A stretch of 64,000 bases of DNA. It comes from Pocillopora damicornis (lineage: Eukaryota). The notes beneath the pieces were generated by a model. The model searched no databases, was not told the origin of the DNA, and was given only the letters and a program-made list of their open reading frames with translations. This document shows, one piece after another, positions 5,339 to 31,206 of this stretch (the first letter of the stretch is position 1; each line of letters begins with the position of its first letter). Location of the stretch: the NCBI RefSeq assembly GCF_003704095.1, contig NW_020847372.1, positions 372,001-436,000 on the forward strand, read 5' to 3'. A program made the position numbers and the translations under genes.

Positions 5339-8300
5339 TCATGAGTAGCCGAACCGTGCTCGGCCTTTCTTCACCTGACGGAATCTTTGTACATTGCTGA
5401 GCCTGCCTCCTTTGGGTGCTGGGCTACGAGAGACCACCTTCACTTCTTCAAGAGACTGCAAAGTAATAATAATAAAAAAGAAAAGTATTAATGTCGAAAA
5501 AACAAAACTTCCAAATAGCTGTGATATCAAATAAAATTTTTCATAAAATTATGCTGAGGTATCTCCAACGCTATGCAACTTACTGGAAGAAGTATGAATT
5601 ACAAAGCACGATCCATAATATCTTCTGCTATATCTAGTTGCTTAAAAACATCATTACATAAGGTAAGAGGGGCATATTTTGTAGCGCCTTTCTTTTAAAA
5701 CAGGCCGCGAAGTGATATAGAATAAAGAGGAGAGAGCCTTTATTTCGAAGGAATATAGCTAGATTGCTTGGTAGGATTTAAAATGACGGCGTTCGAAGAA
5801 AACGTTTTTGCCACCTTCTTTCTAGTATAAAACACATCATCTTCCCAAAAATTCCTATACTTTTTAGCAAGATTGAAGCTAGCGGAGGGGTATGATCCAG
5901 AAACCATGGAATTGTTTTTGAGCACGTTTTCATTTTTTAAAGACCATCCACGCCTGATGACATTTGGCTCAAAAGATAGCTGAAAAGAAAGGTTTTTTTA
6001 GAAGGCCCCTGCACAAAATGTTCCTGTTTCCTCAGGTATTGAGTTCTTTTCACATAACCAGGGTAAGTCTCTAAGCAAAATCACGTCTGTTGTACAATGA
6101 AGGCAGTTGTAATTTTGGTTACAAAGTGACAAAAAGTAAAAAAAAAAACACTGGAATTATAGAAATCACTTTTACTCACTTTAAGACGGTCCTGGTAAAA
6201 GCAAAGGACTTGGTACGTTTGTCCGATGGTCAGACTCTCTGGAAACACAAGGTGAAGGACATTTTCTGGAGATTCAATGCCTAGCGATTTCCCCGACTTG
6301 TTTAAGTCCATAGGCCAAAGAGAAGACTCTCGCATACGCTCGGCTAGAACCTCTCCGGGCTCGGGTCTCATTTCTTCGGATGAAAGATAGCGGAAAATGA
6401 AGCGTCGGAGTGCTATGGTGATGGCACGTAGCGTAGAACGATCCGCCTCACTCTTACCAGAGAAAAAGGCTGCTTTGGCCAAATCATCTGTGATCTCTTT
6501 GGGTATAGAAGCACGATAAGTATCATTCACGCGCTTGGCAGCGGATTCAGCCAGTGTGTCTTCAAGAAACTCGTAAAGGGCGACCACGTGCATAAGTTGG
6601 ATTGCACTATGGGGCTGTGGGAGTAACTGCTTTGGAAATGGTCTCGACCCGCCCAGCCACTTGTCTGTAAATTCTGTTAAAGGTTCCTCAGGTTTTCCAT
6701 GTTGATGTCTCTTTAACAGGCATAGGACAATTTCCATATGTTCTAACAATTCCTGGACGCTCTCAAGGCTGTCCTCGCTCTGGCGTACCAAACCACTCCG
6801 CAAAATTTCTGTCAATGGCTGTTGAGGAATAAGCTTTTGTAATTCATCCAGGATACCTCGGCATGTGTGAAAAAGCTCTCGAGAGAAGATAAACTCGCGC
6901 AATCCGTCGAAAGTCGAAAGGAAAGCTTTTCCTACAAGGAAGCGGGCTGCCATTTCTTTTTCAATCTTTGCAAGATCATAAAACACTTCTTTTCCATGGC
7001 CATACTCAGTGTTACGCTGAGAGTTCCTTAAAATGGCATCCGACCACTGGTATTGAATTATTTCTTTCTCACGAGCCTCTTGGACGTGGACCATTGGAAT
7101 GGAACACTTTCCCTCGTCTCGCTCTAGAAAGATCAAAGCAGACGATTTCCCTGTAGCGCCAATACTAAGAACCTTCTGCATGAAGTCGTTCTGTATTTTC
7201 TGAAGTACTTCCATGGCAACACAAAGGAACACTCCTTGATCTCGCTTTTCAACAAGGCAGACAGAAATCGGCGAGCTTTCGCTGACGTATGGAACTTCTT
7301 TTTGCAGCTGTTCCTTGAGAAGGGGACGCATCTCCTCAAACGCAGCGGTAAAGTTCTCAAAAGCCTCTTTTAGTTGCTCTCTTTCCGCTGGTGATTTGGC
7401 TTTTTCTCGAATAACGTCGCCAATCTTCTTGTTGATGTCCTTACGGCTGAGGCGTCTGCTCAAAAGTGAATCAACGATACGACTCCAGGAAACAAGGTGG
7501 ACTAGGTTTCCCACGAGTGGTAGACGGTCATCAAAATCCAGAAACAAACCCAGCAACGGAAATTTGTCTCTCTCTTTGTCCTCAGTTAACATGTAATATG
7601 ATTTAAGGGCATTGAACGTTTTCGGCAATGTTACTCTAAACAGACGGGGGATGTGTAGGTTTCTCTCATTCATTTCTGAAAACTGGAGGTTGTCAGTCTC
7701 TTCAATCTTCCTTTGAGTTGCTGATGAAGATGCGTCTACAGAACGTTTGAGCAACTTTCTTGGATGAAACTCGCGGAGTAAGGGCCCAATCGATGATGCA
7801 AACTTCTTTTCCCAAGACAACCTTTCGTCTGGCGAGCTACAGATACTTGCGGAAGTAAGAATGGAGGAACACTCTTCTAATGCACAATGTAGGAAACGGA
7901 GAACTTCTTCTTCTTTAGCATTTAAAATACTACACAGCACCTTTAAGTCGTTTGATATCTGTTGAAAACAAATCTCAGAAGGACTTCCTTCTTTCGGCTT
8001 AGTGTTCAAGAATTGACCGAGGGAGCTGTTATCAAACAATTCTAGTGCAAAGCCTCCGTAGAGCGCTGCGTGAACAAACAAGTGAAGGATACGGAATTCC
8101 GCAGGTTTAAGCTGCCGAACGCAGAGGGAGATGTCATCAGAATTTAAAAGTGTGACGTAACCCTTTGATGCCAACATCCCTTCTTGAGCGCTTGCCTCAT
8201 TGGGTATGCCCTTTTTCTCACTTTCGTTAAGACAGCTTGCTTCCTTGCCATCACCGACCACCGCATAGAAGGTGCCACAAGACCACGAAGAAGAGGTCGT

Positions 8301-29680: not shown

Positions 29681-31206
29681 ATGATTTGTGATCTGTGCAA
29701 GACCAGAAAACTGCGGAGAGAATTTCCCTCAGATACTGTGACAGATACATGTGATCATGCGCCTTTGCATTGTCTCAGGGTAAGTTAAAGGATTTTGCCC
29801 GCGGTGTGTATACAATTTTCATACTCTCAAGAATTCGCGGGGTTATTGTCAGTATCTGAGCAACTGCGCGCCTACCCCTCCCTTAGGATATCTTACGATA
29901 TCTTTCAATAGTATACGGATGTAGTTCTCCAACAATATTACAAAAGTAATAGTTAAGAAATTAAAGGAAGCTTGTGGCTACCGTTAGTATTGAAAATCGA
30001 ATCCACGAAACCATAGTAACGGTGCATTGTTTGATTTTATCTTTTCTATTTCTTGTAATTTTTTTTATTATCATTTTCAATGCAAGGTTCTAGTGTGTTT
30101 CTGGATTCCGACAACCTGACCGCAAAATCCAATATCTGATTTTCTTGTACCTAAACAGTGTGTCACAAAGTATGTTGAAAAACATCAGAGGTGTTCTCAG
30201 TGTCCTCAAGAGGTAAAAACCAGTAATCCACGGTACCGTGAGTACTTGGAGACCCTGGAGAACTTGTTCCCAAAATACACTGCGCCCACTGCCACGACTG
30301 AAAATGAGCCGTCTACTTCACTGGTTGGTAACGAGACAATCTCTGTTGTCATGTTGGGCGGAGACAGTACAGTAGTGGCCTATAAACCTGGCATGACAAT
30401 CCAAGACCTGAAGAAATTTGTGCAGAACCGGCTCGGACCAGCTCCACTAAAACAGCGGCTGTTGTACAAAGAAAAAGAGCTTAAGGTAAAGGGAGAATGT
30501 ATTTATTGTAATTTGATCATGGTCTTTCACTCTCTCACAAATACTGAAGAAAGTTGTGCAAAAGTGAGAATATCGAGGCATTTAATATCTTGTGTTTCAG
30601 ACTGACTTAGGTACAAAACTGGCCACCTTACAAGATTACGCTATACAGCCGTTCAGCACCCTACACCTCATTGTTGTGTTGTACGAGATTAACCAGTCCC
30701 TTGACCATGCAATTTTTGACCTGTTTTGGGGGTATCCCTCTAGAGGGTGCGACTATCTAGATGCGTCAGTTCTTATCTACAGTGGATCAGCTCTTCAAGG
30801 CATAGTTGATTACAGTAGTCGTGGTTTTATCGGTGTTTCACATTCTGGTGATGTAATGGATCACAAGAAGCGCATTGGTCACCATACCATAAGTGTACAG
30901 CTGAAGTCTTTGCCTAGCAACATCAACAAGTTATTTTTCACCCTCAGTGCATGGAATTCCCCAAACATTTCAAAATATAAAAATCCCAGTCTGCGTTTTT
31001 TCGATGCCAAGGAGCCTAACAAACAGCTCTGCAGTGATCAGATGGGACATGCCGCATACTCTCAGGCCATCATCATGTGCAGTTTGTCAAAAATTGACGG
31101 AATATGGAAAGTTTTCAGTTTGCGCACACTGTCTGCTGGAAATGCAAATAATTATTCTCCACTGCAGCAGACAATCGGTGGCATAATAACTCAAGGACTG
31201 TGTTAA
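29681..31206 (+). CDS. RING finger - ubiquitin-like - TerD domain protein, ~343 aa, 3 coding exons
   Basis: Exons 29681-29779, 30159-30485, 30601-31206, all phase 0, GT-AG. Spliced N-terminus MICDLC-x17-CDH-x4-CLRC-x10-CSQC fits a C3HC4 RING. Ubl: MTIQDLKKFV...QRLLYKEKELK...TLQDYAIQPFSTLHLIV. TerD-like: LFW..DYLDASV..VSHSGD..ISVQLKSLP..LFFTLS..IWKV. AATAAA near 31539. Confidence 0.85.

What the first reader, a model, noticed from the sequence alone, without database searches (positions are those of the whole stretch)
5339..31206. Candidate two-gene immune ubiquitination module: RING-less RNF213-like ATPase head-to-head with a RING-Ubl-TerD gene
Seen: the two genes are divergently oriented with first-exon donors only ~530 bp apart. 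The giant has intact AAA motifs but no RING-type Cys/His pattern and a decayed RZ finger, while the partner encodes a complete C3HC4 RING plus a Ubl and a TerD domain. Known: RNF213 coats intracellular pathogens and ubiquitinates LPS via its RZ finger, and bidirectional pairs are often co-regulated. Inference: the small protein could supply in trans the E2-recruiting, substrate or ligand-sensing function lost by the giant, forming a split E3 system. I do not know of this arrangement being described.
Basis: partly seen in the sequence, partly recalled or inferred. Interest (0 to 1): 0.9.

Follow-up and report, generated by a model that had tools for sequence, protein, structure and literature searches.

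The report
Ancient RNF213-like giant and RING-Ubl-TerD pair
A giant RNF213-type ATPase gene without a RING finger and a small RING-ubiquitin-like-TerD gene are transcribed outward from one shared promoter in this coral. The same head-to-head pair is found in sea anemone, soft coral, amphioxus and an amoeba, so the two genes very likely work together as an old, undescribed ubiquitin-ligase module.

Summary

**The giant (minus strand, 5339 to about 28926)**
- It is a true RNF213 homologue: AAA core E 1e-133 to solved RNF213, and an E3-module fold with Z 18.9.
- Both Walker A/B pairs are intact and there is no RING.
- Its RZ finger has lost 2 of 4 zinc cysteines.

**The partner (plus strand, about 28953 to 31206)**
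- It encodes 343 aa: an invariant C3HC4-type motif, a ubiquitin-like domain and a TerD domain.
- RNA contigs confirm every splice junction. They place the first-exon donors about 526 bp apart, with the two first exons nearly abutting.

**What changes the reading**
- The head-to-head pair is conserved in Stylophora, Nematostella, Dendronephthya (two paralogous pairs), Branchiostoma and the amoebozoan Planoprotostelium (113 bp apart).
- Both families also co-occur in bivalves and Glomeromycota, though they are not adjacent there.
- In stony corals the pair duplicated as a unit.

The "two-gene module" idea is therefore strongly supported. The "compensation for loss" idea is not:
- RING absence is ancestral for this family.
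- The partner also sits beside giants with an intact RZ finger.
- The RZ decay is a recent Pocillopora event.

Physical binding and an immune role remain inferred. I found no description of this pair in the searched literature. The scan had noted parts of it on this same window only.

The parts
5339..5455 (-). Putative last coding exon of the giant (...SLEEVKVVSRSPAPKGGR...GRARFGYS, then stop at 5339-5341).
   Evidence: tblastn of the Montipora orthologue's C-terminus matches 5503-5342. The acceptor position is inferred, not shown by RNA.
6081..18929 (-). Giant exon, a 4282-aa open frame. It holds the N-arm/linker, six-AAA core, hinge, E3 module and CTD of an RNF213-family protein. Homology to relatives ends near 6177, so the real donor lies near there.
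   Evidence: (RNF213, E 1e-133).
15039..15062 (-). Walker A of the first active AAA module (GETGCGKT, ORF aa 1290-1297). Its Walker B, VWVFLDE, lies about 50 aa downstream.
   Evidence: (Pfam AAA/AAA_5).
14061..14084 (-). Walker A of the second active AAA module (GKPGCSKS, ORF aa 1616-1623). Its Walker B is VVLLDE.
10095..10982 (-). Acidic low-complexity insert (ORF aa about 2650-2945). It is variable in length between orthologues and absent in Stylophora P0186. It lies just upstream of where RNF213 carries its RING.
   Evidence: alignment gaps; ORF 3110 = human 4070.
8220..8300 (-). Decayed RZ-type finger (ORF aa 3544-3570), WSCGTFYAVVGDGKEASC. The first Cys is now Trp, and CPxC is reduced to one Cys by a 3-aa deletion. 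The catalytic mid Cys is also absent.
   Evidence: It aligns with the Pfam-detected RZ finger of Gigaspora P0406 and with human RZ 4505-4537 through the structural offset of about 960.
19411..21147 (-). Upstream coding exon of the giant (578-aa open frame, N-arm). Homology to Montipora extends to 21177.
   Evidence: (28% identity to Nematostella P0197, 49% to Montipora P0135).
21316..23040 (.). Retroelement fragment with roughly 330-bp inverted ends, inside an intron of the giant. It is not part of the module.
   Evidence: mirror-image ORFs at 21521-21637 plus and 22700-22816 minus; weak GIY-YIG hit, E 5e-4.
27382..27624 (-). Exon 2 of the giant, with the start codon at 27621 (MSGNDNSKANAG...). 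The lower bound is the end of an RNA contig, not a mapped donor.
   Evidence: (joint 27624/28744 in 3 RNA runs).
28744..28926 (-). Non-coding first exon of the giant. Its donor is at 28744 and it reaches at least 28926.
   Evidence: records 8 and 14.
28927..28952 (.). Core of the shared bidirectional promoter: the gap between the innermost RNA contig ends of the two genes. Two GAS-like TTCNNNGAA sites sit at its edges (28912 and 28970).
   Evidence: Contigs cannot show true transcript starts, so the limits are approximate.
28953..29270 (+). Non-coding first exon of the partner.
   Evidence: joint 29268/29661, GT..AG, in 4 runs.
29662..29779 (+). Partner exon 2. The coding sequence starts at 29681 and gives the first half of the RING-type motif (MICDLCK...CDHAPLHCLR).
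30159..30485 (+). Partner exon 3: the second half of the RING-type motif (CVTKYVEKHQRCSQC), a linker and most of the ubiquitin-like domain.
   Evidence: joints 29778/30158 and 30483/30599.
30601..31206 (+). Partner exon 4: the end of the Ubl, the TerD domain and the stop codon.
   Evidence: TerD, 30 bits; TerD fold.

Best explanation
The two genes form an ancient, co-inherited two-gene module of the ubiquitin system.

The giant is a member of a RING-less branch of the RNF213 family. It has a dynein-like AAA+ ring with two active modules, followed by an RNF213-type E3 module and CTD. The small gene encodes the only RING of the system, together with a non-conjugatable ubiquitin-like domain and a TerD beta-sandwich. 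Both are transcribed outward from one very short shared promoter.

Shown:
- homology of each part;
- the splicing and divergent transcription of both genes;
- the conservation of the divergent pair across Amoebozoa, Cnidaria and Cephalochordata;
- matching phyletic distribution;
- co-duplication of the pair in corals.

Inferred:
- The proteins act together, most likely as a bipartite E3.
- The partner's Ubl docks on the giant.
- The partner's RING brings a charged E2.
- Its TerD domain gives Ca2+ or small-ligand control.
- The giant supplies ATP-driven target binding.
- In the ancestral form, the giant also supplies an RZ-finger cysteine that accepts ubiquitin, in an RBR-like relay.

In animals the RZ nucleophile is mostly gone, and in this Pocillopora lineage even the zinc site is broken. 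Here any ligase chemistry would rest on the partner's RING alone.
For: Giant:
- RNF213 AAA core, E 1e-133.
- The C-terminal 1200-aa model matches only RNF213 structures at E <= 0.001 (best E 2.6e-17). VIA gives Z 18.9, with model 28-927 aligned to human 4070-4974.
- Walker motifs are intact.

Partner:
- A 343-aa protein with orthologues 60-96% identical in the TerD exon from corals to amphioxus.
- Invariant RING-type ligands.
- Ubl and TerD shown by Pfam and by fold.

Transcription.

Head-to-head pairs elsewhere:
- Nematostella.
- Stylophora.
- Branchiostoma: giant CDS start 1.6 kb from the partner.
- Dendronephthya, two pairs.
- Planoprotostelium: a 4084-aa AAA + ZnF_RZ gene 113 bp from the partner, colinear with the window's giant at 38-67% identity in the AAA core.

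Co-occurrence without adjacency: Gigaspora, Ruditapes and Potamilus have both families.

Co-duplication:
- The partner tree and the giant tree both follow the species tree, with octocoral-specific duplicates in both.
- The five 'beta' partners of stony corals lie on contigs of the same length as five 'beta' giants.
- This genome has one giant and one partner only.
Against: - No direct evidence of binding. The single complex prediction gave no verdict (it says nothing either way).
- Adjacency is not universal. It is absent in Rhizophagus and Patiria. By contig identity it is also absent in bivalves and Gigaspora.
- The RING is not recognised by Pfam models.
- Same-contig inference for the coral alpha/beta pairs uses contig length as a proxy.
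- Whether sea star and lamprey, which have the partner, also have the giant was not testable.
- Strong purifying selection (58% identity in the AAA core between coral and amphioxus) does not look like a fast-evolving immune gene.
Confidence: 0.6

Rival explanations
1. Co-regulation only. The pair is held together by a shared bidirectional promoter, so both genes are switched on together (for example by stress or infection). The proteins act separately and do not touch each other.
For: - The first exons nearly abut, and the genes are 113 bp apart in Planoprotostelium. A compact shared promoter is hard to split without harming one gene.
- Adjacency has been lost in several lineages that keep both genes, so linkage is not obligatory.
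- The complex prediction gave nothing (this is not evidence).
Against: - A promoter constraint alone does not explain the same patchy phyletic distribution in lineages where the genes are unlinked (Gigaspora, bivalves).
- It also does not explain duplication of the pair as a unit.
- The domain logic is complementary: the giant has an E3 module without a RING, and the partner has a RING and a Ubl.
Confidence: 0.25
2. This coral's giant lost its RING and RZ finger, and the neighbouring small gene was recruited to supply these functions in trans.
For: The window's giant indeed lacks a RING and has a broken RZ finger. The partner has a RING-type motif.
Against: - RING absence is shared by all family members examined, including amoebozoan and fungal ones.
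- The partner is already paired with RZ-intact giants.
- The loss of zinc ligands is recent. It is absent from relatives 91-93% identical, whereas the pair has been conserved since before the animal-amoebozoan split.
Confidence: 0.04
3. The partner is a regulator or substrate of the giant rather than a co-catalyst. For example, its Ubl could be a handle that the AAA machine pulls on, or it could be an inhibitor released when the TerD domain binds a ligand.
For: - From established knowledge: dynein-like Rea1/midasin binds the Ubl domains of Rsa4 and Ytm1, and RNF213 binds ISG15 (PMC8486878).
- The Ubl is the best-conserved recognisable handle.
- The Ubl lacks a C-terminal Gly-Gly, so it is not conjugated (seen in the sequence).
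Against: The RING-type ligands are invariant from amoeba to amphioxus. That argues the RING itself is used, not only the Ubl.
Confidence: 0.1

Closest known systems
Mammalian RNF213 (mysterin)
   Same: - Six-AAA dynein-like core with two Walker-active modules.
- Colinear E3 module and CTD by fold.
- The RZ finger is at the same place: ORF 3545 corresponds to human 4505.
   Different: - No RING in any member of this branch.
- In animals the RZ finger keeps its zinc cysteines but lacks the Cys4516-type nucleophile. In this window two zinc ligands are also lost.
- The C-terminal third is not detectable by sequence alone.
- A dedicated partner gene is not known for RNF213.
LUBAC (HOIP with HOIL-1L and SHARPIN) and RBR ligases such as Parkin
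   Same: The resemblance is conceptual and rests on established knowledge. In these systems Ubl-bearing RING-type proteins dock on, or are part of, a ligase in which a RING hands ubiquitin from the E2 to a catalytic cysteine in another zinc module.
   Different: - There is no sequence relation.
- Here the acceptor module would be an RZ finger on a separate 4900-aa AAA protein.
- The relay itself is inferred, not shown.
Rea1/midasin with the Ubl domains of Rsa4 and Ytm1
   Same: A dynein-like giant AAA+ protein that engages small proteins through their ubiquitin-like domains (established knowledge).
   Different: Midasin uses a MIDAS domain, acts in ribosome assembly and has no E3 module. No gene linkage is known.
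Bacterial Ter (TerZABCDE) stress and phage-resistance proteins
   Same: The partner's C-terminal domain has the TerD fold: 3ibz and 2kxt, TM 0.65-0.73 on the target, and Pfam PF02342 above its cut-off.
   Different: - It is fused to a RING and a Ubl.
- It is eukaryotic and vertically inherited.
- The invariant motif HSGDVMD...GHHTI differs from the acidic Ca2+ loop that I recall for bacterial TerD. That comparison is from memory and was not tested.
ZNFX1
   Same: It shares the RZ-type finger with RNF213-family proteins. The genome holds at least 10 canonical RZ fingers elsewhere.
   Different: It has a helicase core rather than a dynein-like AAA core, and it is unrelated to this locus.

Membership tests
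RNF213 family (giant) | Dynein-like AAA+ core homologous to RNF213, with two modules carrying Walker A and B | tested here: met
   phmmer E 1e-133 over ORF 1230-2162 against human 2404-3351 in chain numbering. GETGCGKT/FLDE and GKPGCSKS/LLDE are present.
RNF213 family (giant) | RNF213-type E3 module and C-terminal domain | tested here: met
   AF2 model with pLDDT 74. At E <= 0.001 Foldseek returns only RNF213 structures, best E 2.6e-17. VIA Z 18.9 with 683 residues aligned, model 28-927 to human 4070-4974. Sequence alone finds nothing.
RNF213 family (giant) | RING finger inside the E3 module | tested here: not met
   No Pfam RING. No RING-type Cys/His pattern in the window copy or in 7 relatives. 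No RING among the precomputed Pfam domains of 120+19 relatives.
RNF213 family (giant) | RZ finger: C/H zinc site plus catalytic Cys and His (human C4505, H4509, C4525, C4528; C4516, H4537; PMC11549300) | tested here: not met
   The window has 2 of the 4 family zinc cysteines and no mid Cys, and no PF20173 hit. The feature is met in its orthologues in Gigaspora (E 5e-16) and Planoprotostelium.
RNF213 family (giant) | E3 ligase activity and ATP-dependent coat formation | not testable with these tools
   Needs biochemistry.
RING-type E3 (partner) | Eight cross-brace zinc ligands with RING spacing | tested here: inconclusive
   C3, C6, C24, H26, C31, C34, C45 and C48 are invariant in 13 species and in Planoprotostelium. 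The AF2 N-terminal domain has pLDDT 81-92, with a helix after C31/C34. However, the spacing between the fourth and fifth ligands is 4 rather than 2-3, and Pfam RING models give E 0.32 at best.
Ubiquitin-like domain (partner) | Beta-grasp fold related to ubiquitin | tested here: met
   PF00240 scores 32.6 bits. The profile against PDB ubiquitin gives E 1e-10. Foldseek gives TM 0.9 and 36% identity. There is no C-terminal Gly-Gly; the domain is internal.
TerD family (partner) | TerD beta-sandwich | tested here: met
   PF02342 scores 30 bits on the window's exon and 28.7 on P0002, against a cut-off of 25.3. Foldseek hits 3ibz, 2kxt, 2qz7 and 9a6r_B at E 6e-9 to 2e-6.
TerD family (partner) | Ca2+-binding acidic loops | not tested
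   Only the invariant HSGDVMD...GHHTI motif was seen. No residue-level comparison with a solved TerD was made.
Conserved divergent gene pair (module) | The same two families, head-to-head, in distant lineages | tested here: met
   Pocillopora (this window), Stylophora, Nematostella, Dendronephthya (two pairs), Branchiostoma and Planoprotostelium. Not adjacent in Rhizophagus or Patiria.

The most novel reading that the evidence does not exclude
RNF213-type giants began as one half of a bipartite ubiquitin ligase that is older than animals. A RING-Ubl-TerD subunit, encoded head-to-head with the giant, recruits the E2 and senses Ca2+ or a small ligand. It hands ubiquitin to the giant's RZ cysteine in an RBR-like relay in trans. 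Vertebrate RNF213, with its own RING, would then be a derived, self-contained version. The long-puzzling dispensable RING of RNF213 would be a relic of this division of labour.
Probability: 0.3. Interest if true: 0.9.

Novelty: new variant of a known kind. Interest (0 to 1): 0.8.

Why it matters
- RNF213 is a major human disease gene (moyamoya disease) and an innate-immune gene. Its mechanism is only partly understood, and no substrate is known for its RING domain (PMC11549300).
- A conserved partner gene for the RING-less branch of the family gives a concrete, testable candidate for how such giants are coupled to E2 enzymes and to a signal.
- The experiments can be done in tractable organisms such as Nematostella, amphioxus and Planoprotostelium.
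- Divergent gene pairs kept together from Amoebozoa to chordates are, to my knowledge, very rare outside histones. That makes this a strong comparative-genomic prediction of a protein partnership.
- It also shows that the RING-Ubl-TerD architecture is an old eukaryotic protein, not a recent bacterial import into animals.

Tried and rejected
- Complex prediction. Giant ORF 3083-3737 with the partner gave no verdict: score 0.00, alignments not used, controls not run. It counts neither for nor against binding. Only about a seventh of the giant was offered.
- ESM Atlas with the giant's C-terminal 1200 aa: no usable hit.
- phmmer of the C-terminal 1382 aa against PDB: nothing at E <= 1. The homology appeared only by structure.
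- The 578-aa N-terminal exon: no Pfam hit and no PDB hit.
- Acropora partner P0067: not on record for synteny.
Full-length family members occur in Amoebozoa, Glomeromycota, a choanoflagellate, a centrohelid and Picozoa, and the tree follows the species tree.
- Rejected: recent horizontal transfer of the pair as a cassette. Both trees are species-like. Old transfers cannot be excluded.
- Rejected: pseudogene. The 4282-aa frame is open and the first exons are in poly(A) RNA.
- Literature. Six full-text searches returned no paper holding both TerD and RNF213 and none describing the pair. I only spot-checked passages in four papers, and the library misses most subscription journals.
- Procedure. 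The spliced partner was searched exon by exon by reference, or through the database protein P0002 (95% identical). One slip: in the local script I joined the three exon translations for a single blastp. I do not rely on that result, and I repeated it with P0002.
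Full report
**What is at the locus.**

On the minus strand there is one uninterrupted 4282-codon frame (6081-18929) and an upstream 578-codon frame (19411-21147). A terminal exon ending at 5339 matches the C-terminus of the Montipora orthologue.

On the plus strand, three coding exons (29681-29779, 30159-30485, 30601-31206) read through in phase. Contigs of four poly(A)/oligo-dT RNA libraries laid on 25900-31800 carry these junctions:
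- 27624/28744 (ends CT..AC, a minus-strand intron) in 3 runs;
- 29268/29661, 29778/30158 and 30483/30599 (GT..AG) in 3-4 runs.

The giant's non-coding first exon reaches at least 28926. The partner's begins at or before 28953. Contigs cannot show true ends or strand, so this remains approximate.

**The giant.**

The AAA core aligns with solved human and mouse RNF213 at E 1e-133. Pfam sees only AAA models there. Both Walker A/B pairs are intact.

The last third has no sequence match to RNF213. An AlphaFold model of the last 1200 residues, built with 15 relatives (pLDDT 74), tells a different story:
- At E <= 0.001 Foldseek matches only RNF213 structures, nine of them, with the best at E 2.6e-17.
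- VIA-align superposes model 28-927 on human 4070-4974 at Z 18.9.

With that offset of about 960, the human RZ finger falls on ORF 3545-3577. The human finger has zinc ligands C4505, H4509, C4525 and C4528, nucleophile C4516 and base H4537 (PMC11549300). That stretch of the ORF is a short beta-hairpin inside a low-confidence loop of the model.

There is no RING. None is found by Pfam, by a RING-pattern scan of this protein and seven relatives, or in the stored Pfam annotation of some 140 relatives. An acidic, length-variable insert (ORF 2650-2945) lies just upstream of where RNF213 has its RING.

**The RZ finger.**

- In the Gigaspora orthologue the finger is canonical, CKCGFKYVIADCGGAVTQSKCPEC (Pfam PF20173, E 5e-16). 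The Planoprotostelium gene also carries PF20173.
- Animal members keep CxCG...CPxC but mostly lack the middle, nucleophilic cysteine.
- The window's copy, its 99% twin and Pocillopora meandrina have in addition lost the first cysteine and one cysteine of the CPxC pair (in the window and its twin together with a 3-residue deletion). Relatives at 91-93% identity keep all four.

Elsewhere this genome holds at least ten canonical RZ fingers and about seven more distant RNF213-like loci.

**The partner.**

The TerD exon finds 343-aa proteins throughout Anthozoa and in amphioxus at 60-96% identity. In 13 full-length sequences the ligands C3, C6, C24, H26, C31, C34, C45 and C48 are invariant. The same eight stand in the amoebozoan protein.

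Pfam RING models do not reach significance, so 'RING' rests on pattern, conservation and a confident small N-terminal fold. The Ubl and TerD domains are supported by Pfam, a PDB profile search and Foldseek. The Ubl is internal and has no Gly-Gly end.

**The decisive evidence: the pair is old.**

Using the genomic places of partner orthologues, the neighbour on the opposite strand, head-to-head, is a member of the same giant family in each of these:
- Nematostella: P0197, 4686 aa.
- Stylophora: P0186.
- Branchiostoma: P0229, 4870 aa, with its first codons 1.6 kb from the partner.
- Dendronephthya, two separate pairs: P0232 with P0241, and P0220 with P0112.
- The amoebozoan Planoprotostelium fungivorum: a 4084-aa AAA + ZnF_RZ gene ends 113 bp from the partner's start. 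It is colinear with the window's giant at 38-67% identity in the AAA core.

The pair is not adjacent in Rhizophagus or Patiria. In Gigaspora, Ruditapes and Potamilus both families are present but on different contigs.

The partner family is also present in lamprey, a choanoflagellate, a centrohelid and Picozoa. The giant could not be looked for in those.

**Co-evolution.**

Maximum-likelihood trees of partners and of giant AAA cores both follow the species tree: fungi and amoeba outside, then bilaterians, hexacorals and octocorals. Both show octocoral-specific duplicates.

In stony corals a 'beta' clade of partners (P0035, P0019, P0082, P0089, P0078) lies on contigs of the same length as 'beta' giants (P0186, P0171, P0185, P0172, P0187; 62-66% identity). 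'Alpha' partners go with 'alpha' giants. Contig length is only a proxy for contig identity, except in Stylophora, where adjacency was seen directly.

The window's genome has a single giant and a single partner, both alpha. The beta pair is thus missing as a whole.

**Interpretation.**

Conservation of a divergent arrangement across Amoebozoa, Cnidaria and a chordate is hard to explain by chance. The shared patchy distribution and the joint duplication add to that. Together they point to functional coupling.

The domain content is complementary. One gene has an E3 module without a RING. The other has a RING with a docking-type Ubl and a small sensor-like domain. I therefore favour a bipartite ligase (confidence 0.6 for functional coupling with probable physical association; about 0.3 for the specific RING-to-RZ relay).

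The partner was there before the RZ decay, and the family never had a RING.

The immune label is open:
- A Mab-21/cGLR-type gene lies 16 kb away.
- Five GAS-like sites cluster at the promoter and first intron.
- An 'RNF213' gene is induced in activated Nematostella immune cells (PMC13319465). Which paralogue that is, is not stated.
- The strong sequence conservation of both genes looks more like a core cellular function than an arms-race gene.

**Limits.**

- Binding was not shown. The one complex prediction gave no verdict, and only under a seventh of the giant was offered.
- The exact point where RNF213's RING would sit was not mapped.
- Six full-text searches found no description of this pair, but the library misses most subscription journals.
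- I searched the spliced partner exon by exon or through the database protein P0002. I sent no joined model to any search tool. A local script once joined the exons for a blastp; I discarded that result and repeated the comparison with P0002.

Noticed in passing
window 21316-23040: A retroelement fragment with roughly 330-bp inverted ends sits in an intron of the giant. Its ORFs resemble a reverse-transcriptase tail plus a weak GIY-YIG hit (E 5e-4), as in Penelope-like elements. Mirror-image ORFs lie at 21521-21637 (+) and 22700-22816 (-).
   Followed up: partly
window 47723-49294 (+): A 523-aa ORF carries the Mab-21 nucleotidyltransferase domain and Mab-21_C (E 1e-10 and 2e-15). It is a cGAS-like receptor candidate 16 kb downstream of the partner, and was noted before as s1-770022.
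   Followed up: partly
window 54592-55803 (-): A 403-aa ORF holds a complete kinesin motor domain (PF00225, E 5e-118) in a single exon.
   Followed up: no
window 28313-28978: Five TTCNNNGAA (GAS-like) sites fall within 666 bp at the shared promoter and the giant's first intron. The whole 64-kb window has 41, so about 0.4 would be expected here. The count over the whole window is not above shuffles (10 of 100 shuffles reach 41). This is a post-hoc cluster.
   Followed up: partly
window 29847-29885 and 31219-31468: RNA contig depth spikes (up to 308 and 993), and many contigs have loose ends at these two places, in the partner's second intron and just past its stop codon. They look like copies of a high-copy transcribed repeat.
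   Followed up: no
L008 25293-25976 (Dendronephthya): A 227-aa TerD-only gene lies tail-to-tail 3.7 kb downstream of a third giant paralogue (P0236). This is a different arrangement from the head-to-head pairs.
   Followed up: no
L013 18531-19472 and 21035-21635 (Dendronephthya): An ApoL-domain gene and yet another giant (5383 aa) lie just beyond the second pair. The family forms clusters in octocorals.
   Followed up: no
L011 10001-16087 (Patiria miniata): Two tandem copies of the partner gene (341 aa each) have no giant within 10 kb.
   Followed up: no
L010 6416-9381 (Rhizophagus clarus): In this fungus the gene head-to-head with the partner is a 709-aa Fy-3/UBA-domain protein. That is another ubiquitin-binding neighbour, but not a giant. 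A second partner paralogue lies 8 kb downstream.
   Followed up: no
G000 contigs C2278, C2, C3675, C1915: At least ten canonical RZ-type fingers lie elsewhere in this genome, four of them within 30 kb on C2278. Some are on the contigs that hold the more distant RNF213-like loci.
   Followed up: no
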